Below, in pieces: positions 4,250-59,064 of a stretch of 64,000 bases of DNA. Below the pieces are notes generated by a model that was given only the letters and a program-made list of their open reading frames with translations, did not search any database and had not been told where the DNA came from. Position numbers and translations under genes: made by a program. The stretch's first letter is position 1; every line of letters starts with the position of its first letter. The stretch spans positions 185,854 through 249,853 of IMG/VR virus record IMGVR_UViG_3300025000_000053; one strand, written 5' to 3'.

Positions 4250-4261
4250 AACATAATGATA
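4250..4261 (+). promoter_or_regulatory. Late promoter motif AACA-N6-TA (representative; 15 copies listed in findings)
   Basis: AACAtaatgaTA upstream of a tail gene. Confidence 0.6.
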
Positions 4262-4318
4262 AGATATTTAATTATATCTTCCATTATGTTTTTTAGATAT
4301 TTGAGGAGGTAAAAAATA

Positions 4319-6076
4319 ATGCGACAAGAAGTTAAAGTAGTAACTAAATCAAATTTAAATATACGTTCCGCAGCCGGAACAACTAACTCAGTAGTTGGTT
4401 CATTGACTCCTGGTTCAATAGTTATGGTTACAGGGATAGTCGATATTGGTACTCAAACATGGTATAAGCTAGACGATGGTAGAGGATGGATTTGTGGATA
4501 TAACCCAGGTGGTGGTGGAAATGGTGTTTATCTTGAATTAATTAGAGATTTAAATAATTTACCAGAAGTATCAATAACACCAGTACCGAATGATTCATCT
4601 ACCGGAACAGTTAGTGAAACTAGTAGTACTGCAACTAGTTTAGGTTTAGATCAAGCAATAATTACAATGTTATATAATCAGGAAAGAAGTAAAATTAAAA
4701 AAATATCTGCATCGACTAGATTATTTGGTTCACCCTTTCAATTTATTAAACAAACTGATTTTAGAATTAATGAATTAGATTTAGGTAGAAAATATTTAGA
4801 AAATATAATAGCTGAATCACCAATTGTTTTTTTTACTCCTGGTAGACCAAACTATTTACCTAATGTGTCATCCTCACAAAAAGAAGCACTACAAAAGTTT
4901 TTTACTAATATGCAAACTAATGAATCTACTTCTAAAAACATACTGAATGAAATAACTGGTAGTGATGATGTACGTTATTTTGATTTTATTAATGATTTTG
5001 CTGAATATATGAGATATGCTAATTTATTATGTAGAATGTGTGCTATATATCTAGGTATTGAAGATAAAAAAGCCTTTGGAACAAGCACAACATATAAGTA
5101 TTATGACTGGACTGATTATAAATATAAAACAGGCTATGTATCTAAAAATACCGAAGGTTCTAATAAATCTGTATTTTCTCTAGAATCTGTATCTGATGAT
5201 GCATTTGAATTAATGTTTGGTAACTATAACTATATACAATTTTATGTAGAACCAAACACTTCATTTAGTGAATCTATGGGAAGTAATACAACTAGTTCTA
5301 AATTAGAGTCTATGTTTGAAACGGGACAGGGTATAATGAAAGAACTTTCTTTCTTAACAAATGCTGCCGCTTTATCAGGTGTTGATGAAGCAACTAAATC
5401 TTTTGGTGTAAATATGGAAGAAATAACACAAAAAATGGTTAATAATAATGGTGAAGGTTTCTTTTCTAGATTACTAGGAATGTCTTCAGCTGTTTTAAAA
5501 GGTTCAAATATTTTATTTCCAGAAATTTGGCAAGATTCAAATTATAATAAATCATATAATGTAACTATTAATCTAGTTTCACCTTATGGTGATAAAGAAA
5601 GTTTATATTTAAATATTTTAGTTCCATTAATGCATATATTAGCTTTAAGTTTACCCCGTCAATCTACAGCAAATAGTTTCTCTCACCCTTTCTTAGTTAA
5701 AGCTTTTAGTAAAGGTTGGTTCTCATGTGAGATGGGAATAATTGATTCAGTTCAAATTGATAAAGGTGGTAGTGGGGATGCCTGGACTGTTGATGGTTTA
5801 CCATCAGAAATGAAAGTTACTATTGGTATAAAAGATCTTTATTCTAACTTAATGATAACACCTACAACTAAACCAACTTTATTTTTTGAAAACCAAGGGA
5901 TGATAGATTTCTTAGCTGTAATGTGTGGTATAGATTTAACTAAACCTAACTTCTTAATTAAATTAGAATCGATGTTTTCAGTATTTTTTGGTAAAGTTAT
6001 AAACTTACCTCAAGAGGCTTACAACGATGTTATTCAAAACCTTAGGGAAAAAATTTTACCATTATTCCGTATTTAA
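4319..6076 (+). CDS. Virion tail/baseplate protein with N-terminal SH3b domain
   Basis: LNIRSAAGTTNSVVGSL..WYKLDDGRGWI is SH3b-like. Follows the tape-measure gene and has a late promoter motif at 4250. Confidence 0.65.
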   Translation: MRQEVKVVTKSNLNIRSAAGTTNSVVGSLTPGSIVMVTGIVDIGTQTWYKLDDGRGWICGYNPGGGGNGVYLELIRDLNNLPEVSITPVPNDSSTGTVSETSSTATSLGLDQAIITMLYNQERSKIKKISASTRLFGSPFQFIKQTDFRINELDLGRKYLENIIAESPIVFFTPGRPNYLPNVSSSQKEALQKFFTNMQTNESTSKNILNEITGSDDVRYFDFINDFAEYMRYANLLCRMCAIYLGIEDKKAFGTSTTYKYYDWTDYKYKTGYVSKNTEGSNKSVFSLESVSDDAFELMFGNYNYIQFYVEPNTSFSESMGSNTTSSKLESMFETGQGIMKELSFLTNAAALSGVDEATKSFGVNMEEITQKMVNNNGEGFFSRLLGMSSAVLKGSNILFPEIWQDSNYNKSYNVTINLVSPYGDKESLYLNILVPLMHILALSLPRQSTANSFSHPFLVKAFSKGWFSCEMGIIDSVQIDKGGSGDAWTVDGLPSEMKVTIGIKDLYSNLMITPTTKPTLFFENQGMIDFLAVMCGIDLTKPNFLIKLESMFSVFFGKVINLPQEAYNDVIQNLREKILPLFRI

Positions 6077-6090
6077 TAATAAAGGATGTT

Positions 6091-6756
6091 TTGATAATGA
6101 AAAAAAAGTTAAATGAATATTTAATAAAATATGGATTGATACCAAAAAATTTTAATGAAAGATTTTTATATCTTATTAAAGAATTAAAGTTATCAATAGA
6201 TGATATAAATGATATAAAAAAGAAGATACGAAAGATTATTAATGCTAAATGGGAGACAATAGATTTAGTATTTTATTTTTATCCAAAAGCTACACCAAGG
6301 GCACGTTATACAAGCTTTACTAAAACATTTTATGTTAAAGACGCATTTAATTATAGTATTTTATTTAAAGAATTTGTAGAGCAATCTGAAGATTTAGAAA
6401 AATTAATAACAACCCCTTGTAAATTTTATTGTGATCTATTTATACCAATGCCTTCTCAAATGAGTAAGAAAGAAAAAATATTATCTGAATTAAAATTATT
6501 ATATGCTTTACCAAGACCTGATTGGGATAATGCTGGTAAGACATATTCCGATATGGTTCAAAAGCATTTAATAATAGAAGATTGTCTTATAATTGATGGG
6601 AGAGTTAGAAAATTTTATTCAATTAAACCGAGGATAGAAATGAGAATAGAATATATGGAAAAGTATGATTGTTTATTTAATAAGAAAAGAGTAGAAAAAT
6701 GGAAAGTTTATAAGGATAATGAAGATAAAATAATACAAAAAGATAATATATGCTAA
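6091..6756 (+). CDS. rusA: RusA-like Holliday junction resolvase
   Basis: PKATPRAR..RPDWDNAGKTYSDMV..EDCLI..RKFYSIKPRIE matches the RusA acidic motif pattern. Likely start is the ATG at 6097. Confidence 0.75.
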   Translation: MIMKKKLNEYLIKYGLIPKNFNERFLYLIKELKLSIDDINDIKKKIRKIINAKWETIDLVFYFYPKATPRARYTSFTKTFYVKDAFNYSILFKEFVEQSEDLEKLITTPCKFYCDLFIPMPSQMSKKEKILSELKLLYALPRPDWDNAGKTYSDMVQKHLIIEDCLIIDGRVRKFYSIKPRIEMRIEYMEKYDCLFNKKRVEKWKVYKDNEDKIIQKDNIC

Positions 6757-6789
6757 ATAAAAATTAATTATTATGTAAACAACCAATTA

Positions 6790-7185: not shown

Positions 7186-7191
7186 TTTTTG

Positions 7192-8391
7192 TTAATGAAT
7201 TAGTTTTTCAGAAATTTTACGAATTGTATCATGAGAATATTGTTCAAGTTGAACAGTATATAATAATTCCATTAATGTATACTTAGTGATAGCTTCAGCT
7301 AGAACTAAATCCATATTAATATTATACTCTTCATCTTTTATAAAGCCTTCGTCAGGTTTAGTTTGATTTATTTCATCTTCAAGACTATATTCTCCTTTAG
7401 AAACATCCTTAGTAGTAGTTCTGACTTTAAAATCATCATAGTATTCTTTTTCTCTTTTTTCTTCGTCTGCAAACCCAGGTATTAAACTAGAAATTGATTC
7501 TAAAATTTCCTTATAAGAGTGTCTTAATAAAGCATTGAATAAGGTTGTTTCTTCAATGGGGTTTTTATTAACTATAATTTTATTTAAACATTCTTTAACA
7601 TCTTGTTCATTTGGAGTGTTACCATCTGTATCGGCAAGTTTATCACTAACATCATCTTCAATGTCTTTAATTAATTCTTCTTCTTTTTCCTGCCTTTGTT
7701 TTTCATCTTGTACAACAGTTAATACTTTATTTTTAACTAAATTAGATAATTCATCAATACCCAATTTAGATTTATCTAAATCAAAAGTTTCTTTTTCCTC
7801 ATCATCTAATTCAAAGTTTAAAATATTTAAACTATTTTCTTTATCCGCATTACTGTTACATTCTTTAATTTTCCTTTTACATGTCCGTTTAGTTGTTGTT
7901 TCACATAAAGAACGAATTGATTTTAATATAGGTGAATCTGTTTTGATAATTGAATTTTCAAGTAGTTTATATCCTCCATTGTTATCAATATATTTATCAG
8001 TTACAAATTTGAGATTTTCATAATTCTCCATAATAAATTTATCGTCTATATGGAGCGATTTTTTAAATAATTCAAATAAAATTTCTTTAAAAATTATATC
8101 TTTACCAGTACGACTAAGTGAATCTATTTTATTTAAAATTTGCGACTCAAGGATTTGTCTTTTAACTACAGGCTCATAGGATTTTCTTTGATTAAATAAC
8201 TCCTCTGATTTTTTAGCTCTATTATTAATTAATTCACAATGCTCATGAATAATACGATTTTCTAAAAAATCAAAAACACACATATTATTAGCTTTTTTAG
8301 AAATATCTGAAGATTCTTTAATACCAATAGAAAAAGGTTCTACTTTTCTTTCAGCCTTATTAAAAATACTCATATTGATAACTCCTTTCAT
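7192..8391 (-). CDS. Probable virion protein with hydrophobic-x-E processing-like motifs
   Basis: Acidic/coiled-coil ORF with a late motif at 8407-8418; contains GIKES and EILES motifs. Confidence 0.5.
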   Translation of the reverse strand: MKGVINMSIFNKAERKVEPFSIGIKESSDISKKANNMCVFDFLENRIIHEHCELINNRAKKSEELFNQRKSYEPVVKRQILESQILNKIDSLSRTGKDIIFKEILFELFKKSLHIDDKFIMENYENLKFVTDKYIDNNGGYKLLENSIIKTDSPILKSIRSLCETTTKRTCKRKIKECNSNADKENSLNILNFELDDEEKETFDLDKSKLGIDELSNLVKNKVLTVVQDEKQRQEKEEELIKDIEDDVSDKLADTDGNTPNEQDVKECLNKIIVNKNPIEETTLFNALLRHSYKEILESISSLIPGFADEEKREKEYYDDFKVRTTTKDVSKGEYSLEDEINQTKPDEGFIKDEEYNINMDLVLAEAITKYTLMELLYTVQLEQYSHDTIRKISEKLIH

Positions 8392-8426
8392 ATACCCGTT
8401 AATTTTTATTATATTGTTTTTAGTAT

Positions 8427-11069
8427 CTATATTATTTCTATATTGATATCATCAATATCAATAGTTAAATACTCTGGTATAAAATTCATTAGTTCTTCTT
8501 TAGATAAAGTTGACATATCAACAGTTTTATTTTCTATAACCTGTATAGAAGAATCATAATCATTTATTTTAACAAATTTAAGATAATTAACTTCTCTAAT
8601 ATTTGTTTGTATTGCTGTAATTAAATTAGATATATATAGTGAATTATTACCTTTGATATTTATACTTTCAATATATTTCTTAATATAAGTTTTTAATTTT
8701 TTTATTAAACCATCATCATCATTATCAATAATCGGGTTTACTTTAAACCAAATCTTACAATTAACTTTATCTAATAAAATTTTTTCTTCTCCTGCTACAA
8801 AATTTTTAGAAAACCCATAAGTATTATAAAATTTAACATCAATCGAATAATTATTTGTAATTAAATTAATTACATCATCCATATTTTTATATTGTAAAAA
8901 TAATCTGTGAATAAAATCATTATATTTATCGGTATCTTTCATTGTATCAGCTTTTACAAGAGGGATAAAGTTTAAAAGCATATAATAATTTAATTCATCT
9001 ATTTGAACATATTTCATTCTACTTCTAATTAGACTTAGAGGTTTTATAAAATCAATTTTTTCATCTATAGTTGAATACATATTTGTTAATGAAAAATCTT
9101 GTAAATCTAGTATATGATTAAATTTATGATTCATGTTAACATCTGTATATTTATAAAACACATATATATTCATATTTGAATTATTCATCGGAATTATTTT
9201 TATTGATGGTTGACCCGTTAATATATCTTTAACATTAAGTACTCTAAACTTCTGATCTACTGTTATATAATCATCTGTTTGTAATAAAGTTTCGAAAGTA
9301 AATAAATTTAATTCTTCATCATATTTAGATAAAGTAAAATCAACATAACAAACTTCATTAATATCTGTAAAAACACCTATTACTTTAATAATTTGTGATA
9401 CCGCTGTAATAATATCAGTAAATTCATCAGTAACTATATTTAAATCAAATGTCGGTATTATAGTAGTAGATAATTTATATTCATCCTCTCCAATTAAAGC
9501 ATTTCTACCTATATTTAAATTATTACATATAAATTGAACTATAGAATTACTATTAACATACGAATAATCTAATTGTATTGTTTTTATTATAGAATTTAAA
9601 AAGAATCCCACTATAGCTGGTCTTTTTGTAACTGTTATTAAAAATGGATTCGTATATATGAAATCATAATTTAAAATTGTTAAATCATCATTAATTGTTT
9701 TTAATGGTATTATTTCACCAGTATCTATACTTTCATCAATATATTTAAATAAATGACCAGGTTTTAATAAAAGTCTATTCCCTTGTTCATATTCTAAATC
9801 AAAATCTAAAGGTTTTATTTTTAAATGTAATGTATTTGTACTATATATATTTTCATCTATTCCTTTACTTAGTATAAAAGAACCAAATAATCTTTCAAAT
9901 GGATCATTTCTTCGTTTAGTGAATAATATATCTGCTCCATATTTATATTTTAAGTTATCAAAATATAACTGTAAATCGTTCTCAGTAGTTAATGATTCTA
10001 CAGTTGAAAATTTTTTTACTGTATTTTGTTGTAATTCAGTTCTTGGTAAAATATCTAAACCTAATTTACTTTCAGTTTGTGTGATAGCGAATAAAATTAT
10101 ATTATTATTGTATTCATATTTCTCAGACTTAGGTATTACTGATATATTATTACCTTGATATAATGGAAAATTACCTTTACTCCCAATTGTATTAAATATA
10201 TAGATTTTTATCTCTGAATTAAATTTTGGTTGGAAATAATTTTCCAACGGTGTGAATGATATGTTAATTAGTTGACTATCTTTAGAAGAGTAATAACAGA
10301 ATGGTTCTTTTAAAGGAGGGGTATTAATTAATTTTTTTTGTAATTGAATAAATTGAGTAGAATCCGGTGATTTATAAAATATTTCAAAATTTGCCAGATA
10401 ATCACTAAATTCTATTGGGATTGTTGGATAATTTATTTTATCATTAGTTATAATATGTTCTGTTTTAATAAATTTATTCATTTGTTTAACCTTAACTGAT
10501 AAACATAAATATTTACTACCACTATAATTAATTCTTTTTATTTTAATATATGGATTATTAATATTACTAAGTGTATTATTGAAATCTAAATTATAATAAG
10601 CTACATAAATATATTCCCCAAGTTGTTTTGTAGCAATAATTTTAATATCATAATCTAACATGAACTGTATACCTTCTACATCTATAATCATATTTGAATC
10701 TAATATGAATTCAATAAATGTACCTTTATTTGTTCCTAATCTAATAACATCGTCTTCATTTACAAATAATACAATTCCCATTTCTGATGGTGTTGCAAAA
10801 ATATTATCTATTTGAAATAATGACGCATAATTATAAATTGACTCGGGTAAATCTGCTTTATTAGGAAAAATTTCAGGTATAAGTGTAGCTAAAGTATTGA
10901 AAGAGTCTTCACTAATTGTAGTTATCATTTCAGTTGCATATCCTAACAAACCGACATTGAGTTGATTAACATCATCTAAATTAAAATATTTTTTAATTAA
11001 ATTAAGAGAGAACTCTTTTATTGTATATCCACTACTATAATCCCTAATATTTTTAGCCATAATTATCAC
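8427..11069 (-). CDS. Baseplate wedge-like protein
   Basis: 880-aa beta-rich ORF in the tail cluster, resembling jumbo-phage baseplate wedge subunits in size and context. Likely start is the ATG at 11060. Confidence 0.55.
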   Translation of the reverse strand: MIIMAKNIRDYSSGYTIKEFSLNLIKKYFNLDDVNQLNVGLLGYATEMITTISEDSFNTLATLIPEIFPNKADLPESIYNYASLFQIDNIFATPSEMGIVLFVNEDDVIRLGTNKGTFIEFILDSNMIIDVEGIQFMLDYDIKIIATKQLGEYIYVAYYNLDFNNTLSNINNPYIKIKRINYSGSKYLCLSVKVKQMNKFIKTEHIITNDKINYPTIPIEFSDYLANFEIFYKSPDSTQFIQLQKKLINTPPLKEPFCYYSSKDSQLINISFTPLENYFQPKFNSEIKIYIFNTIGSKGNFPLYQGNNISVIPKSEKYEYNNNIILFAITQTESKLGLDILPRTELQQNTVKKFSTVESLTTENDLQLYFDNLKYKYGADILFTKRRNDPFERLFGSFILSKGIDENIYSTNTLHLKIKPLDFDLEYEQGNRLLLKPGHLFKYIDESIDTGEIIPLKTINDDLTILNYDFIYTNPFLITVTKRPAIVGFFLNSIIKTIQLDYSYVNSNSIVQFICNNLNIGRNALIGEDEYKLSTTIIPTFDLNIVTDEFTDIITAVSQIIKVIGVFTDINEVCYVDFTLSKYDEELNLFTFETLLQTDDYITVDQKFRVLNVKDILTGQPSIKIIPMNNSNMNIYVFYKYTDVNMNHKFNHILDLQDFSLTNMYSTIDEKIDFIKPLSLIRSRMKYVQIDELNYYMLLNFIPLVKADTMKDTDKYNDFIHRLFLQYKNMDDVINLITNNYSIDVKFYNTYGFSKNFVAGEEKILLDKVNCKIWFKVNPIIDNDDDGLIKKLKTYIKKYIESINIKGNNSLYISNLITAIQTNIREVNYLKFVKINDYDSSIQVIENKTVDMSTLSKEELMNFIPEYLTIDIDDINIEII

Positions 11070-12502: not shown

Positions 12503-12706
12503 CTTTCATATTATTAATTGTTAATTTAATGTTCAAGACAGAAAAAATAATGGTTTTTTTATTTATATATTATTTATCTAGAAAATAAAAATAATCATCT
12601 GATCTAATAATAAATATACTTAAAAATAACATCCCCGCAAAATAATATTACTTATATAAAAAATAGATATAAGTTATTTTAAAAATTAAGGGAGAGTGTT
12701 ATTTTT

Positions 12707-12908: not shown

Positions 12909-14414
12909 TTGTTTATAAAACATATAAATAAAATAAATGTGTACGAAAGGAAGTGTAAAAATTCAATGGGAGTTTTAAAAGATATAATGGATACACTTAG
13001 GGACATAGATATACATGGTAGTTTAGATGAATATTTTAAAAAAAAGAAATATTCATCTATAGCTAAACAATCCCAAGAAGGTACTCTTCAGTTCCCTGTT
13101 ATAGTTTCCAGAACATCACTTGATATAGAAAATCTTCAAACTATTTCCAGATCTTTAGAACGTCAATTTAGTTCTTTTGTTCAAATAGTTTTAACTATGA
13201 ATCCAGTTCTTAATATTGAAACTGAAAAGAACTTAGCAACATATTTAAGAAAGTTTCATCAAAATTCAGATAGTAAAACAGATATGAATGATATTACTAA
13301 TTTTTTTGTAGATATTGATAATTTGAAAGAAAATTATTTATTGTTGACAGATGAATATGATAACATTGCAATATTAACAGGTACATTTGAAGGTTGCTCT
13401 ACAAAACAAATTGTTGAAACCAATAGAGAGCAACTTAAAGTTATTTTAGAATATTTAAAATTAGATTTATTAAATGATAAGTTTACTCCAAATAATCAGT
13501 CATTGTATAAATTTAGTAATAATAATTTAACAAAATTTCATAATAGAAATGTTTTATTAGAAGCACCTAATAAACCACCTCAAGGTGGAGGGACAAAACC
13601 CCCACAACGTCCACCATATAAACCATCAGCACAAATAATTAGTAGTGTTGGAACTGTTAATAACACTTTTGTTAATAACACTAGTAAAGATAAAATTTAT
13701 AACGGTGGTGGTAGTGAATCAAAAAGATTGTCTGAATTTAATTTACCTAATAAAACATTAGTTGATAATGATGTTAAAAAATCAAATGAGTTAGTACCAA
13801 CTATGTTACACCTTCGTTTAAAATTGATAGATAAAAAAGGTGATAATCATGGTACACATGATTATTTAATAGGTATTAAAGCTGTTATTCATCCTGTAAA
13901 TTCTGAAGAAATGATAAGTAATGTTGTTAATGCTTGTAAAAACAATAATAAACTTTTTGATTTCATTAGATGGACTTCTGGTGAAATTAATTTCTTACAG
14001 GATTTTGTATTAAATATTAAAGAAATTAAAACCGATGTTAATAATAGAGGGAATGGTTCTTCTCCTTGGTGGATTACTTTAAAGAGAAGAAAAGCTTTAT
14101 CTAAAGTAAAAAATACATTACTTTTAGGTAATCAATTATTACCAAATACAACTTTAGTTCTATCTATGCAGGAAGTTGAATTAATTAAAGCGACATATGG
14201 ATATGATTTAATGAATACAACCTTTATTAATAAGGTTATGTTAGAATATTTCTTATTATGTGTTGTAATTGTTGATACTTCATCTCAATTAGCTCATTTT
14301 TTATTTGATGGGCAAAATTCTTATCAAACTAGTACATTTATTGGTTTGGAGAGAGAAAGTGGTTCGGATGAAAAGAAATTTAAAGAAATGCTTAAACTAA
14401 TTAATAGGGTTTAA
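12909..14414 (+). CDS. Virion structural protein (head region)
   Basis: First gene of a late plus-strand operon. Late motif at 12919-12930; likely ATG at 12966 after gaaagg. Confidence 0.55.
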   Translation: MFIKHINKINVYERKCKNSMGVLKDIMDTLRDIDIHGSLDEYFKKKKYSSIAKQSQEGTLQFPVIVSRTSLDIENLQTISRSLERQFSSFVQIVLTMNPVLNIETEKNLATYLRKFHQNSDSKTDMNDITNFFVDIDNLKENYLLLTDEYDNIAILTGTFEGCSTKQIVETNREQLKVILEYLKLDLLNDKFTPNNQSLYKFSNNNLTKFHNRNVLLEAPNKPPQGGGTKPPQRPPYKPSAQIISSVGTVNNTFVNNTSKDKIYNGGGSESKRLSEFNLPNKTLVDNDVKKSNELVPTMLHLRLKLIDKKGDNHGTHDYLIGIKAVIHPVNSEEMISNVVNACKNNNKLFDFIRWTSGEINFLQDFVLNIKEIKTDVNNRGNGSSPWWITLKRRKALSKVKNTLLLGNQLLPNTTLVLSMQEVELIKATYGYDLMNTTFINKVMLEYFLLCVVIVDTSSQLAHFLFDGQNSYQTSTFIGLERESGSDEKKFKEMLKLINRV

Positions 14415-15436: not shown

Positions 15437-15511
15437 AAAAATAACTTTATTAAATTGACAATATAAACATATTTATAAAAAATCCTAATACTGAAAGGTG
15501 GTAAAATAATA

Positions 15512-16573: not shown

Positions 16574-16621
16574 TTGAATAATAAGAATATAAGTTAAAAA
16601 ATCAAAGGGGGATACATTCAA

Positions 16622-17707: not shown

Positions 17708-17713
17708 TATATT

Positions 17714-17757
17714 AATACATTAGATGAATAGTAAATAAACTATTCATCTAATGTATT
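17714..17757. terminator. Long-stem intrinsic terminator
   Basis: aatacattagatgaatagt-aaataa-actattcatctaatgtatt. Confidence 0.7.
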
Positions 17758-17815
17758 TTATATTTTCTTTGAAAACAAATAAATAAGAAAAAAGAAAAGG
17801 AGTTGACTTTTATTT

Positions 17816-24972: not shown

Positions 24973-25061
24973 GTAAATATCTCCTCCTAATTAATTTTAA
25001 TTTTTTGTTTAACTAGATATAAAAATCTATTTAGATATTTTAATAATATATAATTAAAATT

Positions 25062-25937: not shown

Positions 25938-25987
25938 TTTAAAACCTCCTTTAATTATAATAATGTTTTATATATGATAAATAACTA

Positions 25988-27944: not shown

Positions 27945-28010
27945 TATAATTCACTCCTTTATATTAGTTACTTTAAGTAATTGTTTTTTATTTAAAGAGA
28001 AAATCAATTA

Positions 28011-37379: not shown

Positions 37380-37458
37380 CCTCTCATTATTCTATTATTT
37401 AAATGTTAATTATATATAAAAGATATAACTAAATAAAAAAATCAAGTAGATATAATAT

Positions 37459-37860: not shown

Positions 37861-37958
37861 ATTAACCTCCTATTATTTATATTTTTTTAAATTATTGTTT
37901 TAAGTATATTATTAATTTACTTATAATACATTTTAGTAATAATTGTTATTATTTTGAG

Positions 37959-40173: not shown

Positions 40174-40554
40174 ATGTTGAATGATATTATTTCTGTATTC
40201 AATCAGCTTACTCGTAATGAGTTGGCTGATTGTTCATTATTTGAAAATATTATTAATAGACATTATGAAAAATTTAAATATTTTTACTTTATTATAGATA
40301 ATATTAGCTTAAAGAATATAATAGACATTAAATGTCAGGAAGAATCAACACGATTAAATATTTCCATCTCATTTAAAACAAAAAAAGAAAGAGATTTATT
40401 TTTTAATATATTTAATAATAAGATTAATAATAATTGTAATTTTAAATATAAAGATTATTTTATTTTCAAAATTATAAAAGATACTAAATCTATTAATGTA
40501 ACAATAGAAAATAATGATATTATAGTAGAAGAGGTGTTGTATGGATGCAAATAG
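40174..40554 (+). CDS. Hypothetical protein
   Basis: Overlaps the start of the RNAP gene. Confidence 0.5.
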   Translation: MLNDIISVFNQLTRNELADCSLFENIINRHYEKFKYFYFIIDNISLKNIIDIKCQEESTRLNISISFKTKKERDLFFNIFNNKINNNCNFKYKDYFIFKIIKDTKSINVTIENNDIIVEEVLYGCK

Positions 40555-42803
40555 AACTCTTTGATACTAAGAAATTTATCGAAGTGAATAACTTAAGAGA
40601 GGTAACAAATTTAATATTATTTGAAAAAGGAAATATCCCAACTGTTGATGGTTTATTATCAACAGATATATTTGGGGTATCATCTAGAGAAAGAAAAGAA
40701 ACATATGCTTATATTGATTTACACGGACATTTCTTACATCCATTTATATTTAAGACATTAAAACGAATGAATAGAAAATTTGAATCTGCTATATATGGGA
40801 ATATAAATTTTATAATTAAAGATGGTGAATTAGTTGAAGATGAAAACGGAGAAAGTGGAATAGACTTTTTATATAAAAATTGGGAAAAATTTAATTTTGA
40901 ACGAAATAATAGTATGATGCGTAATGAAAGAATTTCTGTTTTAGAATCATATAAAAAAAATGTTTTATTTACTAAGTATTGGATTGTTATGCCAGCTTTT
41001 TTTAGAGATGTGAATTTACAATTTGCAGCTGAAGGAAGAGTATCTCACCATGAGATAAATGATAAATATTCTAAGTTAATTAGGTTTGCTTCTATAATTA
41101 TTAATAACAATTTTGATTTTGTTCTAAATACAACTAAAGCAAAAATTCAAGAAACTCTTGTTGAAATCTACGATTTACTTAAAGGTAAGATAGAAAAGAA
41201 ACAAGGGTTGATTCGTAAATCATTATTAGGTAAATCAATAGATTTTGGCGTTAGGAGTGTAAATTTACAATGCACGTGATTCTTTAATTGTCGGGGAAGC
41301 CCTTTAAATCTCTTACTACCAAACTATAATAGCAATATTATAGTGGCGAAGGGTAATGCCTTAGGTATGGTAACAAGGTAAGAAATTAGGTAATCCGCAG
41401 CTAAGATTCTAATATATTAATATTATTAGAATAAAGTTCAACGACTATCTGATGACGCTACTTTTAGTAGAGTAGGAGTAGACTCACAAGTCAATTAATG
41501 GTGAGTTGAAATGGGAAACCATCAAAAAGATGAAGATATAGTCTAGTATCCTAGTGAAAACTAGGGAAGTTCATTAGAGAACTGCATAGTCTGACGAACT
41601 ATGTGAATACAACGAATTTCTGCACCAATATTCAAAGCGAATAAATCAGAAGATATGAAAGTCGATTTTTATAATTGTGGTATACCATTATCACAATGCT
41701 GTTCATTATGCACACCATATATGATAACTTGGGTGAAAAGATTCTTTCAGAGGGAATTAGAAAGACTTTATATGAAATATCCGGTTAAATTAAAAACAGA
41801 AGAGATTATTTATGTTAAATTAAAATCACCTGAGTTATTTTTTAATGATGAATATATTGAAAAGCAAATTAATAAATTTATTTCTAGTTATGGTGATAGA
41901 TTTGAAAAAATCAAATTACCTATAGATGATCCTAAATATGAAAAAAATATTTATTTAAGTTTTATTGGAAGAGAATTTATTAAAGGTGTTCCAGAAACAG
42001 AATCACCTTTAATACAAAGACCTGCTACATGGTGTGATATTTTATATCAAGCAGCAGTTGAAATTACTTCTGATAAACATGTTTATGTAACACGATATCC
42101 TGTTTTAGATTATTTCGGTACTTTTCCTAATAAAATTCATGTTTTATCAACTCATGAAACTATTCCAATGTTTGTTGGTTCTAGGGTATATGAGCACTAC
42201 CCTAAAATAGATATTAAAATGCCTAAAGAAAAAGTTTCTATTACCTTTGCTGATACAGTAACAATGTCAAACCTGTATTTAACAGGTCTTGGTGGAGACT
42301 ACGATGGTTCTTTAAATGCCCACTTATATGGTGACATATATGTGAATCTTCTTTAATTGTCGGGGAGGCTCTTAGAGCTTTTTATTATATAATAAAAAGA
42401 TTGGGTAATCCGCAGCTAAGATTCTAATATATTAATAATATATTAGAATAAAGTTCAACGACTATCCCTAGGTACTGAAATGTACAACAGGAGTAGGGCT
42501 CAAGTGAGTGGGTGAAAATCCCTTAAATCGAAATAGGAAGCACCTCCTATAAGGTGATGATATAGTCTAGTATCCTAGTGAAAGCTAGGGAAGTTCATAA
42601 GAGAACTGCATAGAATAACGACCTATGTGAATATATCGGATCAAGTATCTTTAAAGGTTTTATTTTCACAAGAAGCTAATCTTGAGGCAGATAGAATTAT
42701 GAAATCAAAAGGTCATATTCTTAATATCTATGGACAAAATATGAGAAAGACAACAAATGAAGGTGCTCATACTTTATTTATGTTAACAAAGTTTAATAAA
42801 TAA
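40545..42803 (+). CDS. rpoC: RNA polymerase beta' N-terminal subunit (probably virion RNAP), spliced from exons 40545-41260, 41615-42308, 42639-42803 (524 aa)
   Basis: GLIRKSLLGKSIDFGVRS-V-ISAP and GGDYDG-DQV are restored only after removing two group I introns. Frames checked; stop codon at 42801-42803. Confidence 0.85.
41261..41614 (+). mobile_element. Group I intron 1 (354 nt, ORF-less)
   Basis: P aattgtcgggga, Q aatccgcagc, R gttcaacgacta, S aagatatagtct. P1 gugu|a pairs with ugcac, giving a U.G pair at the splice site. Terminal G at 41614. Confidence 0.9.
42309..42638 (+). mobile_element. Group I intron 2 (330 nt, ORF-less), inside the catalytic DYDG/D motif
   Basis: P/Q/R/S elements present. 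The exon ends in U (ggt), the intron ends in G, and splicing restores DYDGD. Confidence 0.9.
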
Positions 42804-44547: not shown

Positions 44548-44592
44548 AATATAAATACCCCCAATCTTTTTATTAAATTGTTTAAATGAAAA

Positions 44593-46837: not shown

Positions 46838-46950
46838 ATTAATCAACCTTTCTTTATAAGTATTTAATATAATGTTGAAAAGTATTAGAAACATAAAAAT
46901 AAATAAATCAGTATGTTAAAATAAAATACATACTGATTTATTTATTAAAT

Positions 46951-49261: not shown

Positions 49262-50812
49262 TTATAGTTGATTTAAGAAACTTAAAAATTCATCAGATAC
49301 AACATCTTGATTGACTTCAAGTTTTTCTCCAAGCTTATCTGGATGGTCATAATCAACGATTGTAAATGTTGAATTTAAAATTGTTGATAATAAATTCAAA
49401 ATTAAATTTGACTTTTTTACTTCACTAAGAGTTGAGTATTTATCTTGTATTAATGATTGATATATTGGAGTTTCTTCTAATTTATTTAAAAATTTTGTAT
49501 TTTGAATAGTACGAGTATTTAATCTTCCTTCAATATTACCACTTATAATCTGAGGAAGATATAAAGCACCCTGAATTTGTAATCTTCTTTTCAATAATAT
49601 AACAAGAGTTATATATTGCTTTCTTGTTAATAAATTTAAATCTCTATATCCACCAAAATATTTAGCATAAAAATAGTGTATTAACTGTACTTGAAATTTA
49701 TTTATCTTATGAAATTTCTTATAAAAGTTAATTTCATCTTTAGTAATTTCAACACCAATATTTTTCCTGATGTTTTTAATTGTACTTTTAATATTTACTT
49801 CAGATAATATTATCAATGACTCATCTATTTTATTAGAATTCATTTCAAATTTATCTAAACCGCTTAAACCATCTTCACCACTTTTATCTGCACTTAATTC
49901 TACTAAATTAACTTTATAATTCTTTTTAATAATAAAATATAATTGTTTCTCTAGTATAAAAGAATTGAAGTTAACAATATTTTTATTGAAAACATATTTA
50001 AACATAGTTTCAGTTATAATATTTTTTTTCAATAAACCGTTGAGATGTATTAGTGGATCAACACCGAATATTTCTTGTTGTTCCCACATTGGTTTATTTG
50101 TAGCTAAGTTTTTATTTATCTTAGCAGACACTGTCACCATTAATTTATTATAAATATTAATTCCATCACCATACAAATCAAATAAACCTTTATAAAAATT
50201 ATAGATATAATCAATATCTTTCTTAACATTATTCACATTAATATATTGAAATACTACTGGAATCATTATTTTAATAGACATTGATATCATCATCATTATT
50301 TTAGCATGTTCATTTGTTATCTCTAATGATTCACTATATTTCTTTTTATCATTACTTGTCAAATCTATATAGTAATTATCTTCAACCATTTTAATAATCT
50401 TTTCTTTCATGGTATCTGTAAATAAAATACCATATAGAAATTTAATAAAGGTTTTAGGTTTTTTAATAGGTTTACTCTTATTATCAATGAAATATTTAAG
50501 TTTAAAATATGACATTAATAACTCATTATTAATATCATAAAATTTAATAAAATAATTTAGATAATGAATTATTCCCTTTCCTTTGTCATTATCCTCAAGT
50601 TGATTAACATATGATTCTTTCTTAATAATGAAAACATTTAATGTGCTAGTACTATCCTTTTTAAAGATTTTATCAAATGGGATTATTATTATTTTCCCAT
50701 CAGATTTAATAATCTTATCTTTTTCTTCGGGCACCCACTCATCTACTCGTATTATTTCGGTAACAGAAATCATTACTAATATCCCACCCCCCCCTAATAA
50801 AAATACCTCCAC
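49262..50812 (-). CDS. Probable non-virion RNAP promoter-specificity subunit (AR9 gp226 / phiKZ gp68-like)
   Basis: About 500-aa helical protein two genes from the chaperonin, the spacing I recall for AR9 gp226 and gp228. Early motif at 50862. Inferred from context, not from alignment. Confidence 0.4.
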   Translation of the reverse strand: MEVFLLGGGGILVMISVTEIIRVDEWVPEEKDKIIKSDGKIIIIPFDKIFKKDSTSTLNVFIIKKESYVNQLEDNDKGKGIIHYLNYFIKFYDINNELLMSYFKLKYFIDNKSKPIKKPKTFIKFLYGILFTDTMKEKIIKMVEDNYYIDLTSNDKKKYSESLEITNEHAKIMMMISMSIKIMIPVVFQYINVNNVKKDIDYIYNFYKGLFDLYGDGINIYNKLMVTVSAKINKNLATNKPMWEQQEIFGVDPLIHLNGLLKKNIITETMFKYVFNKNIVNFNSFILEKQLYFIIKKNYKVNLVELSADKSGEDGLSGLDKFEMNSNKIDESLIILSEVNIKSTIKNIRKNIGVEITKDEINFYKKFHKINKFQVQLIHYFYAKYFGGYRDLNLLTRKQYITLVILLKRRLQIQGALYLPQIISGNIEGRLNTRTIQNTKFLNKLEETPIYQSLIQDKYSTLSEVKKSNLILNLLSTILNSTFTIVDYDHPDKLGEKLEVNQDVVSDEFLSFLNQL

Positions 50813-50904
50813 TAAGGTCTACTATATCTTTTACTAAATTAAAAATCTTATCTATACTTTTATAATATATACTTCATTTTATTTATACTTTATCTGGGTG
50901 GGTA

Positions 50905-53432: not shown

Positions 53433-53498
53433 AATTTCCTACCCCCATTTATTTTTAGTCTTTAGAACTATGTTTAACACATAATTATTTTTTAATAT

Positions 53499-56069: not shown

Positions 56070-58351
56070 TTATATTTTTAGAATATTACTATAGTAATCA
56101 TCTTCAGTTGTCTTAATAATTCCAATACCCAAACTATCTAATACACCATGGAACGTAGATAAATTATTATTTATAATTGTACTATAATCAATAAAAGGAA
56201 TTATCCAATTTGGTATCTTAGGTATATTTCTAGGCAAAGCTATAACTTTAACTCCTTTCTCTCTTATTTTCTTATCACTATTATTATATATATTTTCAAT
56301 TATCCTTTCATATATTTCAGGCTCAGATTGTTTTATTTTTTCAATAGAGTTTTCATCCATATTAACCTTAATAATATCAATGTGTTCAGGTAGTTCTATT
56401 GAATTATCAGGATAAGCATAATTCCATGCTAAAACAGCACGGACACCCATTTCTCTTAATGGATCTTTATATGCTTCTAATTCTTTTACTGATTTAGGAA
56501 TTAGAAAATCTTTTTGACCTGATTCTAGAGATATTCTAATTATATTTTCTAATTTTTCTAATTCTTTTAAAACATTAGATATATTAATTTCTTCAGTTGA
56601 TAATAAATGTTCTTTAATAAGATTTTTAAAGAATTTTTCTGTTGCTTCTCTTGTTGATGACTTAACAAAATCTAACGTAGTGTTCACATAGGTCGTTAAT
56701 CTATGCAGTTCTCTTATGAACTTCCCTAAGTTTCCCTAGGATACCAGACTATATCTTCATCCTTATTATATAACTAATAAGGAGCCTCCCATTTCGATTT
56801 AAGGGATTTTCACCCACTCACTTGAGCCCTACTCCTATTGATCATTTCAGATCCAAAGGGATAGTCGTTGAACCTTTCTCTTATATTAGAGACTTGGCTG
56901 CTGATTACCCAATATTTTAGTTTATTACCTTTATCTTAAGGTACTAAAATCTATAAGGATTTTCCAGCAGTTAAAGAGGTTTTCTTTATATATTACTATA
57001 TAAAGGAGCAATATTTATTACCCTTAATATCAACTTTTTCAGGATATATTTCATCTCCTTCTCTTAATCTAACACTACTTATATATCTTTTCTTTTTCTG
57101 TGTTAAAATAAGTCTAGTGAATAAAAATTCATTTTTCATATTTATTTTATGTCTATATCTTTTAGGTATATTTACATCTTTAGTATATTTCTTCAATGTA
57201 TTAGTAACCATATTAGTTATTATATAAGCCAATAAGTTGATAGAAATAAATTTTAATTCAGTTTTATCCTTATTTATTAATTTATCATTAACATCGATAA
57301 TATTATATTTAATAAATTTAACCCATTTATCAATAGTCATAATAGTTGAATCTGTATCTGAACCAACTACAGTTTTTCTTTCATCATATTTTAATCTACG
57401 AATCCTATTATATGGAGAAAAATTAAAGAAAACAAATTCTTTATATAGTTTCCATAATAGTTCTAAATCATCTTTTACGTTATTAGGTATCTTATTAGGA
57501 TTTTTAAATGTATCAATATTTTCTATAATATATGATAATAAGTTTCTTATTTTTCTTAATTTTGAAAATTCAAAAATGTTATTCTTATAGTAAATTCTAT
57601 TAATATCTTTTTGACTTAAAGATAATAAATAATTTAAAATAAAAGAATTATACTCTTTTTTATAATTAAAAAATCTTTTCTTTAAATATTTCATTAATTG
57701 TTTTGAACTAATATTTTCTAAAAAATTATCATTTAAATTTCTTTTTTCCTTAATTACATTAGTTAAAAAAAACACACATTCTTCAAGATTATTAAATGGA
57801 GCATTATTTTCTAAAAAAGTTTCAAAAGCCATTTCAGCTGTAGCTATTAATGATTGGCCGGAGTTTGTAATAGAACTGGCGGTGTATAAATTATAAAAAT
57901 TAGATGTTGGGGCTCCGTTGGACCCGAAGAACGAGTTTGCGTTGGTTTTCTCAGAACCTTGTAACCTATCAAATGTCCCATATTCATAATCATCTTTTGA
58001 ATATTTTTTTAATTGATTTTTATACTCTTTTCTTAACGACATAAAGTTTTCTAGCATAACAGCGGCTGGATTCAATGATTCATCTTGATTTTTAAAAAAT
58101 ACTCCGAATCCAGCAACTATAGGTTTAGTTTTTTTAACCCAATCATATACTGATATTAAATCTACATTAATAGATTTATGAATATAGTTATTATGAATTA
58201 TAGCTTTAGGGTTAATTAAGTTTTTATCTATAATATCATCTAAAACTTTTGATATATCTTTATTTGTTAGTTCAGGATACATTCTTTTAAATATCTCTAT
58301 ATTACTTTCTTTCCAATCTTTTATAAATAAACTTTTAATTTTTTTAGATAT
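56070..58351 (-). CDS. polB: Family B DNA polymerase, C-terminal polypeptide of a split enzyme; exons 58351(or 58282)-57020 and 56675-56070
   Basis: EKTNANSFFG (motif B), GSDTDS (motif C), KKRY, and DIKG-LDFVKSST restored after splicing. Motif A (DxxSLYP) is absent. Confidence 0.85.
56676..57019 (-). mobile_element. Group I intron 3 (344 nt, ORF-less) in the DNA polymerase gene
   Basis: On the minus strand: P aactgctggaaa, Q aatcagcagc, R gttcaacgacta, S aagatatagtct. The exon ends ggt and the intron ends in G; frame restored. Confidence 0.9.
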
Positions 58352-58435
58352 TGTATTTACCTCCTAACATAAAGTTTTTTAGTATAGAATTAATATTTTG
58401 TTATCCAATTTGTTAATTTTTATTTTAATTCAAAA

Positions 58436-58942
58436 ATGCCTATAGAACAATTAATTAAAAAAATGGCATTGAAAGGTTGTGTTGTTATGTTATTCAATAA
58501 GAATGGAAAACAAGATAATTATACTGAAGATTTAACTCCGGATTCATTATCTTTAATTACTGAATGTATGTTAAAAGATGAATTGAGTAAAGAAGAGTTG
58601 GAAGCTTTTTTAGAAGATTCATCTGAAATTAATTCGGCTATGAAAGATGAAGTGTTACTTGAAAAAACTATTGTTAGAATGGATAAGTATGCAAAATTAA
58701 ATAGGGGTCAGAAAATAGCAGTATTTACTATTGCTAGAGAAAAAAAAGACCCCAAGTTTAAGAAACTATTAACTATTTGGAGAATTGAAAGATTTTTGGA
58801 AGCCGAACTTATGAAAAAATATGGTAATGAAGGTATGCGTCGTGCCAAAGCAGCTATGAATAAAAGTAGAACATCAACCTCTAAAATTGTTAAAACAGTT
58901 GCTAATAAAGTTCATAATCAATTTAACACTGGAATTAAATAA
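58436..58942 (+). CDS. Late protein with acidic propeptide-like N-terminus and basic C-terminus
   Basis: Late motif at 58446-58457; likely ATG at about 58487; LITE and VLLE|K motifs. Confidence 0.55.
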   Translation: MPIEQLIKKMALKGCVVMLFNKNGKQDNYTEDLTPDSLSLITECMLKDELSKEELEAFLEDSSEINSAMKDEVLLEKTIVRMDKYAKLNRGQKIAVFTIAREKKDPKFKKLLTIWRIERFLEAELMKKYGNEGMRRAKAAMNKSRTSTSKIVKTVANKVHNQFNTGIK

Positions 58943-58945
58943 TTT

Positions 58946-58981
58946 AAATAATACTAGATGGATATCCATCTAGTATTATTT
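58946..58981. terminator. 36-bp perfect palindrome (terminator candidate)
   Basis: aaataatactagatggat|atccatctagtattattt. Confidence 0.7.
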
Positions 58982-59064
58982 TTTATTCTATGTTCCATGC
59001 CTTAAAATATATATTATTAATACATGAAAAACAAATAAATAATTTAAACTAAAGAAAGGGTGTT

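What the first reader, a model, noticed from the sequence alone, without database searches (positions are those of the whole stretch)
4250..59041. Late promoter motif AACA-N6-TA before virion genes; matches AR9 and hints at uracil-containing DNA
Seen upstream of 15 genes: plus strand 4250, 12919, 15466, 17774, 58446, 59030; minus strand 8407-18, 12522-33, 25956-67, 27974-85, 37396-407, 37888-99, 44571-82, 46865-76, 53463-74. My rough estimate is about 1 chance hit per kb per strand, so this positional clustering is unlikely by chance. Established: AR9 non-virion RNAP with gp226 recognises AACA-N6-TA and needs deoxyuridines in the template strand. Inference: the same late-transcription system operates here, and the genome may be dU-substituted.
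Basis: partly seen in the sequence, partly recalled or inferred. Interest (0 to 1): 0.7.

Follow-up and report, generated by a model that had tools for sequence, protein, structure and literature searches.

The report
AR9-type late promoters, probably thymine DNA
The AACA-N6-TA motif is a real late-promoter signal of an uncultivated giant phage that carries its own AR9-like RNA polymerase and specificity factor, but gene content and that factor's base-reading helix argue that its DNA contains ordinary thymine, not uracil.

Summary
Observation confirmed. All 15 sites exist. The bare pattern is not enriched (83 hits against 98±10 in shuffles). Its placement is: sense strand, final A 12-50 nt before a start codon, in 11 window genes against 2.0±1.3 and in 47 of 255 genome genes against 8.5±2.9. 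AR9, run as a positive control, gives 59 of 294 against 9.2. Only the 6-nt spacer gives a peak.

The window encodes a homolog of AR9 gp226, the promoter-specificity subunit, at 49262-50812(-). The genome encodes all split subunits of the virion and non-virion RNA polymerases. It also carries the AR9 early-promoter core TATATATTAT. The promoter interpretation is therefore well supported, although no transcription start site could be mapped.

The uracil inference is not supported. An early operon encodes thymidylate kinase, dCMP deaminase and a Clostridia-type tandem ThyX. Seventeen of 18 metagenomic relatives carry ThyX or ThyA; none of 7 cultured uracil-DNA phages does (p = 1e-5). AR9's candidate dTMP phosphatase and Ugi have no homolog here. 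The valine (V206) and the aromatic residue (Y210) that shape AR9's promoter pocket are Pro and Gln here.

Best reading: a thymine-compatible natural variant of the AR9 late-transcription system, in a large clade that is probably hosted by Clostridia.

The parts
4250..4261 (+). Candidate late promoter AACATAATGATA. It precedes 4319-6076, a homolog of AR9 g205 virion protein. The 5'UTR is 57 nt, the longest of the set.
12919..12930 (+). Candidate late promoter. It precedes the AR9 g214 minor virion protein homolog. The likely true start is the ATG at about 12966, in frame with ORF 12909-14414.
15466..15477 (+). Candidate late promoter before 15512-16573 (353 aa, function unknown). The 5'UTR is 34 nt.
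17774..17785 (+). Candidate late promoter before 17816-18895 (359 aa, function unknown). The 5'UTR is 30 nt.
58446..58457 (+). Candidate late promoter before the AR9 g153 virion protein homolog (start near 58487). The 12-mer is identical in the diverged head copy of the record.
59030..59041 (+). Candidate late promoter before non-virion RNAP beta'C exon 1. It lies 12 nt downstream of an early-promoter core, giving a tandem early plus late arrangement. Both motifs are conserved in the head copy.
59008..59017 (+). Early-promoter core TATATATTAT (AR9 virion-RNAP type), upstream of the late motif for beta'C.
8407..8418 (-). Candidate late promoter before 7192-8391 (about 395 aa, function unknown).
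12522..12533 (-). Candidate late promoter before 11066-12502, a homolog of AR9 g213 virion protein.
25956..25967 (-). Candidate late promoter before 25062-25937, an endolysin (glucosaminidase). The 5'UTR is 18 nt.
24998..25009 (-).
6778..6789 (+).
27974..27985 (-). Candidate late promoter before 26022-27944 (640 aa, function unknown).
37396..37407 (-). Candidate late promoter before 32832-37379, a 1515-aa fusion protein with an AR9 g233-like endonuclease N-terminus.
37888..37899 (-). Candidate late promoter before 37459-37860 (133 aa).
44571..44582 (-). Candidate late promoter before the 84-aa ORF 44293-44547(-).
46865..46876 (-). Candidate late promoter before a repeat-containing ORF (start near 46837) that lies upstream of the AR9 g165 virion protein homolog at 44593-45795.
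53463..53474 (-). Candidate late promoter before GroEL (51753-53432). The motif is conserved in the head copy, while the sequence just upstream of it has diverged.
49262..50812 (-). Homolog of AR9 gp226, the sigma-like promoter-specificity subunit of the non-virion RNAP. Its 2.1bis helix reads N-K-P-M-W-E-Q where AR9 reads D-V-V-I-W-T-Y.
50862..50871 (-). Early-promoter core TATATATTAT upstream of the gp226 homolog. AR9 g226 also has an early promoter.
59065..62102 (+). Non-virion RNAP beta'C (AR9 g154 homolog) in two pieces, 59065-59808 and 60798-62102. They are separated by an HNH homing-endonuclease ORF at 59867-60598.
40545..42803 (+). Virion RNAP beta'N (AR9 g145 homolog) in three pieces, interrupted by two group I introns.

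Best explanation
The window is the last 64 kb of a roughly 228-kb giant phage genome, distantly related to Bacillus phage AR9/PBS1 (25-40% protein identity). The phage transcribes itself with two of its own multisubunit RNA polymerases.

Inferred mechanism, by homology with AR9:
- A virion-packaged polymerase starts early genes at TATATATTAT-type promoters. These genes include the gp226 homolog and the nucleotide-metabolism operon.
- A non-virion polymerase is then assembled from four split beta/beta' subunits plus the gp226-like specificity subunit encoded at 49262-50812(-).
- That holoenzyme starts late genes (virion proteins, virion-RNAP subunits, lysin, GroEL) at AACA-N6-TA(A). The AACA complement in the template strand would be read at -11 to -8, and transcription would begin at the A after the T.
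- Genes that have both motifs in tandem, such as non-virion RNAP beta'C at 59008/59030, would be expressed throughout infection, as in AR9.

The phage differs from AR9 in that it most likely has thymine in its DNA. It makes dTMP and dTDP itself, and its specificity subunit lacks the valine that excludes the thymine methyl group in AR9.

Shown here: the motif statistics, the gene content, the homologies and the residue differences. Inferred: which polymerase uses the motif, the start site, template-strand reading and the base composition of the DNA.
For: Motif
- Orientation-, position- and spacer-specific enrichment is as strong as in AR9.
- T and A reappear at the predicted positions when sites are anchored on AACA alone.
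- It is the top pattern outside the Shine-Dalgarno sequence in unbiased enumeration, here and in relatives G003 and G013.
- The median 5'UTR is 30 nt, against 28 nt in AR9.
- The motif is kept in both diverged copies (82-89% identity) of the duplicated 21 kb, while flanking bases change.
- AR9 late TSSs map to AACA-(6N)-TA/G in 94 of 118 cases (PMC5312081).

Machinery
- The gp226 homolog matches PDB 7s01_A at E 1.6e-15. Foldseek gives 9e-16 to 7s01_A, and phiKZ gp68 is next.
- All non-virion and virion RNAP subunits have AR9 homologs, and the order primase, gp226, g227, GroEL is conserved.
- The early core TATATATTAT occurs 57 times, 40 of them sense-upstream of genes.

Gene class
- Among promoter-bearing homologs of virion proteins, 12 have the late motif only, 2 have both and 1 has the early motif only.
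- MCP, sheath, TerL, tape measure and the virion-RNAP subunits carry the motif in both this phage and AR9.

Thymine
- ThyX scores 107.9 bits in Pfam. It sits in an early operon with dCMP deaminase and thymidylate kinase.
- It is the Clostridia-type tandem ThyX and keeps 95 of 120 invariant columns.
- A thymidylate synthase is present in 18 of 19 clade genomes and in 0 of 7 uracil-DNA phages (p = 1.2e-5). Thymidylate kinase is present in 12 of 13 against 0 of 7.
- There is no homolog of AR9 g151 (dTMP-phosphatase candidate) or of Ugi.
- AR9 V206 corresponds to P and Y210 to Q here. In the seven uracil-DNA phages these positions are always V and Y/F.
- In AR9 a V206G change is enough to accept thymine at -10 (PMC9209446).
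Against: - No transcription start site was mapped. The only RNA runs from the source study are tiny SOLiD libraries that hold none of the sequence.
- DNA base composition cannot be read from sequence.
- A ThyX gene does not prove activity during infection, and a Tmk-like kinase could in principle phosphorylate dUMP.
- Some relatives that carry a thymidylate synthase do have Val at position 206, so that residue alone is not diagnostic.
- In AR9 the -11 uracil requirement is imposed by DNA backbone packing, not by V206. How thymine at -11 would be tolerated here is unexplained.
- The gene-by-gene association of the motif with virion homologs is not significant when operon-internal genes are counted (p = 0.15).
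- Some non-structural genes carry the motif: DNA polymerase exo, GyrB and GroEL.
Confidence: 0.72

Rival explanations
1. The AR9 system operates unchanged, the genome is dU-substituted, and promoter recognition needs template-strand deoxyuridines.
For: - The nearest cultured relatives by DNA polymerase and gp226 are all uracil-DNA phages: PBS1/AR9, BpSp, LPJP1, the S6-like Staphylococcus phages and phiR1-37.
- The promoter motif is the same.
- A deaminase related to PBS1 Dcd is present (E 1e-15).
- There is no dUTPase.
- A Tmk-like kinase could serve as a dUMP kinase.
Against: - The deaminase and kinase share an operon with an intact Clostridia-type ThyX.
- A thymidylate synthase is present in 18 of 19 clade genomes and in 0 of 7 uracil-DNA phages.
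- No dTMP-phosphatase or Ugi homolog was found.
- V206 and Y210 of gp226 are not conserved.
- In the gp226 tree the seven uracil-DNA phages sit on one side of a branch and this clade on the other.
Confidence: 0.08
2. The DNA carries some other non-canonical pyrimidine, for example a post-replicative thymidine modification. The promoter pocket would be adapted to that base, not to plain thymine.
For: The 2.1bis helix is remodelled and position 206 is very variable across the clade (P, Q, T, L, V, A, I, G, S). Jumbo phages often modify their DNA (general knowledge).
Against: No modification gene was looked for systematically or seen. ThyX is of the housekeeping cellular type. The sequence assembled normally from short-read metagenomes in two samples.
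Confidence: 0.08
3. The motif is not a promoter of the phage polymerase. It would be a 5'UTR element (an RNA processing or translation signal) or a -10-like element of a host sigma factor, for example sigma-K-like CATA-N3-TA.
For: The motif sits at a fixed distance from the Shine-Dalgarno sequence and lies in AT-rich leaders. The gp226 homolog has a weak, non-significant match to a sigma-K chain (E 0.56).
Against: - The sigma-K spacing corresponds to AACA-N5-TA, which is at background (10 genes against 47 for N6).
- There is no -35 partner.
- The identical motif is an experimentally mapped promoter with the TSS at the final A in AR9.
- The cognate specificity subunit is encoded here.
Confidence: 0.06
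4. The motif is a chance by-product of a 24.5% G+C genome.
For: The total count of the pattern is at or below expectation.
Against: z is 13 against dinucleotide shuffles of the same upstream regions. Sense exceeds antisense 47 to 7. The peak is confined to one spacer length. The motif is conserved in relatives with 26-34% G+C.
Confidence: 0.01

Closest known systems
Late promoters of Bacillus phage AR9/PBS2, read by the non-virion RNAP holoenzyme (gp105, gp089, gp270, gp154 plus gp226)
   Same: - The consensus AACA-N6-TA, its orientation and its distance to start codons.
- Split beta/beta' subunit genes and a gp226 homolog with the same two-domain fold.
- The local gene order primase, gp226, g227, GroEL.
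- Late motifs before MCP, sheath, terminase, tape measure, virion-RNAP subunits and lysin.
- Tandem early plus late promoters before a non-virion RNAP subunit.
   Different: - Protein identity is only 24-40%.
- Position +2 is A in 86% of sites here (TAA) against 35% in AR9.
- The gp226 2.1bis helix has P for V206, M for I207 and Q for Y210.
- This genome encodes ThyX and thymidylate kinase and lacks the AR9 dTMP-phosphatase candidate, Ugi and RNR.
- The host is probably a Clostridium-like anaerobe and the source is groundwater.
Early promoters of AR9 read by the virion RNAP (AAATATATATTAT-N5-G)
   Same: The core TATATATTAT is identical, with a purine about 6 nt downstream. It lies before replication, nucleotide-metabolism and non-virion RNAP genes.
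   Different: The upstream AAA of AR9 is replaced by a looser T-x-T-A pattern. The downstream purine is A more often than G.
phiKZ non-virion RNAP with gp68 (late promoter TATG)
   Same: The specificity subunit is a distant structural relative: Foldseek gives 8que_B at E 5e-5. The DNA is thymine-containing.
   Different: The promoter consensus is entirely different, and gp68 is needed for core assembly. The phage studied here is far closer to AR9.
Cultured uracil-DNA jumbo phages (PBS1, AR9, BpSp, LPJP1, S6/PALS_2/Machias, SA1, phiR1-37)
   Same: They are the nearest cultured relatives, with the same two-polymerase strategy and a gp226 family member.
   Different: All seven lack ThyX, ThyA and thymidylate kinase. 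All seven keep D-x-V-[IM]-W-x-[YF] in gp226. This phage and its clade show the opposite on both counts.

Membership tests
AR9-type late transcription system (non-virion RNAP plus gp226, AACA-N6-TA/G promoters) | The consensus AACA-(6N)-TA/G lies upstream of late genes, sense strand, about 15-50 nt before the start codon. | tested here: met
   47 of 255 genes against 8.5±2.9 in shuffles. The peak occurs at N6 only. The strength equals that in AR9.
AR9-type late transcription system (non-virion RNAP plus gp226, AACA-N6-TA/G promoters) | Four split beta/beta' genes encode the non-virion RNAP core. | tested here: met
   blastp to AR9 g105 (8e-61), g089 (4e-70 and 8e-25), g270 (3e-32) and g154 (9e-43 and 4e-11).
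AR9-type late transcription system (non-virion RNAP plus gp226, AACA-N6-TA/G promoters) | A gp226-family promoter-specificity subunit is present. | tested here: met
   phmmer E 1.6e-15 to 7s01_A over residues 40-484. The AF2 model gives a Foldseek match at 9e-16. W208, the aromatic residue at Y246 and betaN R363 are kept.
AR9-type late transcription system (non-virion RNAP plus gp226, AACA-N6-TA/G promoters) | Transcription starts at the final A/G of the motif. | not testable with these tools
   No RNA run holds the sequence.
AR9-type late transcription system (non-virion RNAP plus gp226, AACA-N6-TA/G promoters) | The motif is read in the template strand and needs deoxyuridine at -11 and -10. 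| tested here: not met
   Only the sequence proxy could be tested. V206, the residue that excludes thymine, is Pro here. Y210 is Gln. The clade varies freely at position 206. Biochemistry was not testable.
Uracil-DNA (dU for dT) phages | The phage does not synthesise thymidylate, and phage enzymes remove dTMP or dTTP (Dtm or Dtt). | tested here: not met
   ThyX and thymidylate kinase are present. There is no homolog of the AR9 Dtm candidate g151. None of 7 uracil-DNA phages has ThyX, ThyA or Tmk.
Uracil-DNA (dU for dT) phages | dUTP is supplied by a Dcd-type dCTP deaminase. | tested here: inconclusive
   A CMP/dCMP-deaminase domain related to AR9 g221 is present (E 1e-15). It is embedded in a 456-aa fusion protein, and its substrate cannot be told from sequence.
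Uracil-DNA (dU for dT) phages | An inhibitor of host uracil-DNA glycosylase (Ugi or an analogue) is present. | tested here: inconclusive
   There is no sequence homolog of AR9 Ugi. Such inhibitors are small and diverse, so absence by sequence is weak evidence.
Uracil-DNA (dU for dT) phages | dU replaces dT in virion DNA. | not testable with these tools
   This needs LC-MS or UDG sensitivity of DNA from the source material.

The most novel reading that the evidence does not exclude
AR9-type promoter recognition is not tied to uracil DNA. A large uncultivated clade of about 200-260-kb phages keeps the ACA-N6-TA late promoter and the gp226-like factor on thymine-containing genomes. The clade has more than 160 gp226 homologs in public data, and some sit in bins named Herbinix and Romboutsia.

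In this clade the 2.1bis helix is naturally remodelled. Position 206 is P, Q, T, L, A, G, I, S or V, and position 210 is Q or K. In one sub-clade the -11 base has shifted from A to G together with Lys at position 210. Uracil dependence would then be a specialisation of the Bacillus/Staphylococcus/Listeria/Yersinia branch.
Probability: 0.55. Interest if true: 0.7.

Novelty: new variant of a known kind. Interest (0 to 1): 0.6.

Why it matters
AR9 gp226 is the only known sigma-like factor that reads its -10-like element in the template strand, and it has been described as uracil-dependent. A natural clade that keeps the promoter and the factor but makes thymidylate offers three things:
- ready-made variants for asking how U/T discrimination is built and lost;
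- evidence that the promoter motif alone cannot be used to predict uracil DNA in metagenomic phages;
- a simple genomic discriminator to test: thymidylate synthase plus thymidylate kinase against the D-x-V-I-W-x-[YF] helix.

It also gives a promoter-level annotation (early, late, or both) for an otherwise unannotated giant phage.

Tried and rejected
- **megablast of window DNA and tblastn of the gp226 homolog against INPHARED phages:** no match. The relationship to AR9 showed only through the PDB chain search and local blastp.
- **RNA evidence:** the only RNA runs of the source study hold none of the sequence, so no TSS test was possible. DNA runs are short unitigs with many strain branches. 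They confirm presence but say nothing about base chemistry.
- **phmmer of ThyX against PDB:** no hit. Its identity was settled by Pfam and by cellular homologs instead.
- **UDG family search:** absent from every genome, including the controls among phages, so it is uninformative.
- **dUTPase:** absent here and in the uracil-DNA phages, and present in only 3 relatives, so it is not discriminating.
- **Gene-by-gene Fisher test of late motif against virion homolog:** not significant (p = 0.15), because operon-internal genes lack promoters. Promoter concordance with AR9 orthologs is only a trend (p = 0.08). Both analyses suffer from naive start-codon calls.
- **Host sigma-K-like reading:** rejected by the spacer scan.
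- **Six unknown late-motif genes** (15512, 17816, 7192, 37459, 44293, 24382): no PHROG match or AR9 homolog. 26022 likewise has no PHROG match and no AR9 homolog.


Full report
**Context.** The window is bases 185854-249853 of a 249,853-bp IMG/VR virus record with 24.5% G+C. The source is a groundwater metagenome. Neither the window DNA nor its gp226-like protein matches catalogued phages by megablast or tblastn. The DNA polymerase finds PBS1/AR9 as the best cultured relatives at 33.6% identity. BpSp, Listeria LPJP1, S6-like Staphylococcus phages and phiR1-37 follow; this is the group of cultured uracil-DNA jumbo phages. Local blastp against AR9 ORFs gives 88 gene matches at 24-47% identity, with long stretches of conserved gene order.

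**The observation.** All 15 sites are present as listed.
- As a bare pattern, AACA-N6-TA is not enriched. The window has 83 matches against 98±10 in shuffles. The genome has 297 against 375 for the reversed pattern.
- What is non-random is placement. Genome-wide, 39 hits end 20-39 nt upstream of a start codon on the sense strand, against 8 for the control pattern.
- Counting genes whose upstream region has the motif with its final A 12-50 nt before the start gives 47 of 255. I counted only one copy of the duplicated ends (see "Side observation on the record"). Dinucleotide shuffles of the same regions give 8.5±2.9 (z 13), and the antisense strand gives 7.
- The window alone gives 11 against 2.0±1.3.
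- AR9, where these promoters were mapped experimentally, gives 59 of 294 against 9.2±3.1 with the same script.
- Varying the spacer from 2 to 10 nt gives a peak only at 6, with 47 genes against 25 or fewer here and 59 against 28 or fewer in AR9.
- Anchoring on AACA alone in upstream regions recovers T (59 of 98) and A (71 of 98) at exactly the positions the consensus predicts.
- An unbiased enumeration of 4-mer/gap/2-mer patterns ranks AACA-N7-AA and AACA-N6-TA as the best patterns that are not Shine-Dalgarno derivatives.
- All 15 reader sites are followed by a Shine-Dalgarno sequence and a start codon 15-57 nt downstream. Two further sites, 6778(+) and 24998(-), look the same.

**What the motif looks like here.** The spacer is A/T-rich. 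Position +2 is A in 42 of 49 sites, against 21 of 60 in AR9. No upstream (-35-like) conservation is seen. The median distance from the final A to the start codon is 30 nt, against 28 nt in AR9.

**A second promoter class.** The genome also has a second, longer motif, TATATATTAT. It occurs 57 times, and 40 genes carry it sense-upstream. A purine follows 6 nt downstream. It is identical to the core of the annotated AR9 early promoters, AAATATATATTAT-N5-G.

**Which genes carry which motif.**
- The late motif precedes homologs of AR9 virion proteins: g165 (head copy), g153, g115, g125, g281, g259, g205 and g213.
- It also precedes the prohead protease, MCP, TerL, sheath and tape measure.
- It precedes the virion-RNAP subunits g078, g264 and g189, and an endolysin.
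- The early motif precedes the gp226 homolog, ligase, GyrA, RecD, NrnB, non-virion RNAP betaC and beta'N, and the nucleotide operon.
- Among promoter-bearing virion homologs the split is 12 late only, 2 both and 1 early only.
- Non-virion RNAP beta'C has both motifs in tandem at 59008 and 59030, behind a terminator-like hairpin. Both are conserved in the diverged second copy. AR9 uses the same arrangement for its continuously expressed genes, which include four of its five non-virion RNAP subunits (PMC5312081).

**The machinery.**
- ORF 49262-50812(-) matches chain A of PDB 7s01 at E 1.6e-15 over nearly its whole length. Chain A is AR9 gp226, 464 aa.
- An AlphaFold model built from a 24-sequence alignment has pLDDT 79.4. 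It finds 7s01_A and 7um0_A as top Foldseek hits (9e-16 and 9e-14), followed by phiKZ gp68.
- The neighbours are homologs of AR9 primase g225, g227 and GroEL g228, in the same order.
- All four non-virion core subunits and the virion-RNAP subunits are present elsewhere in the genome. Several are split by introns or homing endonucleases, as in AR9.
The start site itself could not be checked, because the only RNA libraries of the study hold none of the sequence.

**The uracil question.**
- The genome has no ThyA and no dUTPase.
- At genome coordinates 162550-166077(-), outside the window, one early-promoter-driven operon encodes three enzymes. They are a thymidylate kinase (PF02223), a CMP/dCMP-deaminase domain protein (PF00383) and a 444-aa tandem ThyX (PF02511, 107.9 bits).
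- That ThyX is the form found in Clostridium, Heliobacterium, Dehalobacter and related chromosomes, at 40-47% identity. It keeps 95 of 120 columns that are invariant in 16 cellular proteins. It also keeps the same division of the ThyX motif between its two halves.
- Homologs of the AR9 proteins expected for a uracil genome were not found by phmmer at E ≤ 1. These are g151, the candidate PBS1-type dTMP phosphatase, and Ugi g104. Only the deaminase is shared (pathway from PMC12697855).

**Comparison across genomes.**
- I collected 44 loci that encode gp226 relatives from IMG/VR. I then searched 18 contigs longer than 160 kb, together with seven cultured uracil-DNA phages.
- ThyX is present in 10 of the metagenomic relatives and ThyA in 7 others. 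That covers all 11 that are at least 90% complete; the only one without either is 67% complete.
- None of AR9, BpSp, LPJP1, Machias, S6, SA1 or phiR1-37 has either gene. Including this genome, the split is 18 of 19 against 0 of 7 (Fisher p = 1.2e-5).
- Thymidylate kinase shows the same split, 12 of 13 against 0 of 7.
- In a gp226 tree the seven uracil-DNA phages fall on one side of a branch (support 94/92) and all thymidylate-synthase-bearing phages on the other.

**The specificity subunit itself.**
- In AR9 the -10 uracil sits against V206 of the 2.1bis helix, and V206G lets the enzyme accept thymine. Y210 stacks on -9G. The authors report that this valine is invariant in homologs from uracil-DNA phages (PMC9209446).
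- My alignment confirms D-x-V-[IM]-W-x-[YF] in all seven uracil-DNA phages. Both copies in this record read N-K-P-M-W-E-Q.
- Across the metagenomic clade position 206 is P, Q, T, L, V, A, I, G or S, and position 210 is Q or K.
- Other contact residues are kept: W208, an aromatic residue at Y246 (which stacks on the non-template AACA) and betaN R363.
- The helix is predicted as a short helix (residues 240-248) in the model.
- The overall architecture of recognition is thus retained, while the feature that enforces uracil is not.

**The motif in relatives.** The ACA-N6-TA signal with its spacing-6 peak is present in all six relatives I downloaded.
- G003 (ThyA, 34% G+C): 51 genes with AACA-N6-TA.
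- G013 (ThyA, 26% G+C): 50 genes.
- G015 (ThyX): 38 genes.
- In one sub-clade (G009, G010, G014) the preferred -11 base shifts to G. In G010, GACA-N6-TA is found before 31 genes and AACA before 12. This sub-clade has Lys at gp226 position 210. It is a single lineage, so the co-variation is only a lead.

**Conclusion.**
- The motif is a genuine promoter-class signal of the AR9 type, and the cognate factor is encoded in the window.
- By itself the motif does not indicate uracil DNA. For this phage the gene content and the factor's own sequence point to thymine.
- I put the probability that the sites are late promoters of the phage non-virion polymerase at about 0.85, and the probability that the genome is dU-substituted at under 0.1.
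- What remains unexplained is how a thymine at -11 is accommodated. In AR9 that constraint comes from DNA backbone packing, not from a side chain.

**Side observation on the record.** Its first 21.2 kb and last 21.6 kb are collinear at 82-89% identity. The head gp226 copy is identical to one on a separate IMG/VR contig (L024), and the tail copy is nearest to another (L023). The source runs show many variant branches. The record is therefore most simply a genome of about 228 kb whose assembly ran on into a co-occurring strain. Window 42401-64000 duplicates the head. This affects six of the 15 sites, although it also provides a useful conservation test.

Noticed in passing
window 42401-64000 (genome 228254-249853) against genome 1-21181: The two ends of the record are collinear at 82-89% identity. 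Both carry copies of primase, gp226, GroEL, DNA polymerase and non-virion RNAP beta'C. The head gp226 is identical to that of a separate IMG/VR contig (L024), and the tail copy is nearest to L023. This is most likely an assembly that wrapped round a genome of about 228 kb into a second strain, not a true repeat.
   Followed up: partly
window 41199-41566 and 42299-42590 (+); also 56683-56996 and 59808-60798: Two group I introns (Rfam RF00028, 57 and 76 bits) interrupt virion RNAP beta'N. DNA polymerase and non-virion RNAP beta'C are also split, the latter by an HNH endonuclease ORF. A 200-250-nt element is repeated at least 12 times across the genome next to split genes.
   Followed up: partly
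relatives G009, G010, G014 (loci L043, L045, L054; whole genomes L079-L128): In one sub-clade the late motif prefers G at -11. In G010, GACA-N6-TA is found before 31 genes and AACA before 12. The gp226 2.1bis helix there has Lys at the AR9 Y210 position. This may be co-evolution of promoter and factor, but it rests on a single lineage.
   Followed up: partly
genome 162550-166077 (-), outside the window (locus L016:4550-8077): An early operon encodes thymidylate kinase, a dCMP-deaminase fusion (456 aa, with Cys-rich N-terminal repeats and a long C-terminal extension) and a Clostridia-type tandem ThyX. The ThyX is 40-47% identical to chromosomal ThyX of Clostridium and related bacteria, which hints at the host group.
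   Followed up: yes
proteins P0067 and P0109: gp226-family proteins sit on contigs of 213 kb and 244 kb that are filed under Herbinix sp. (a MAG) and Romboutsia ilealis. Relatives of this phage are therefore present in, or binned with, Clostridia assemblies.
   Followed up: no
window 45821-46787 (-): A 138-bp unit is repeated 7 times (84% matches) inside an ORF of about 340 aa. The ORF sits behind a late motif and upstream of the g165 virion protein homolog. It is absent from the head copy of the record.
   Followed up: no
window 32832-37379 (-): A 1515-aa protein behind a late motif combines an AR9 g233-like endonuclease N-terminus (PHROG 15137, 1e-62) with regions resembling acetyltransferase and enoyl-CoA hydratase.
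   Followed up: no
window 2-4234 (+), continuing upstream to genome 180221: The tape-measure homolog is a single 3288-aa ORF, against 1925 aa in AR9. It has a late motif 38 nt upstream of its start.
   Followed up: no
window 15512-20007 (+): Four consecutive ORFs of 353-362 aa have no database family. The first two are detectably paralogous (30% identity). Late motifs precede the first and the third.
   Followed up: partly
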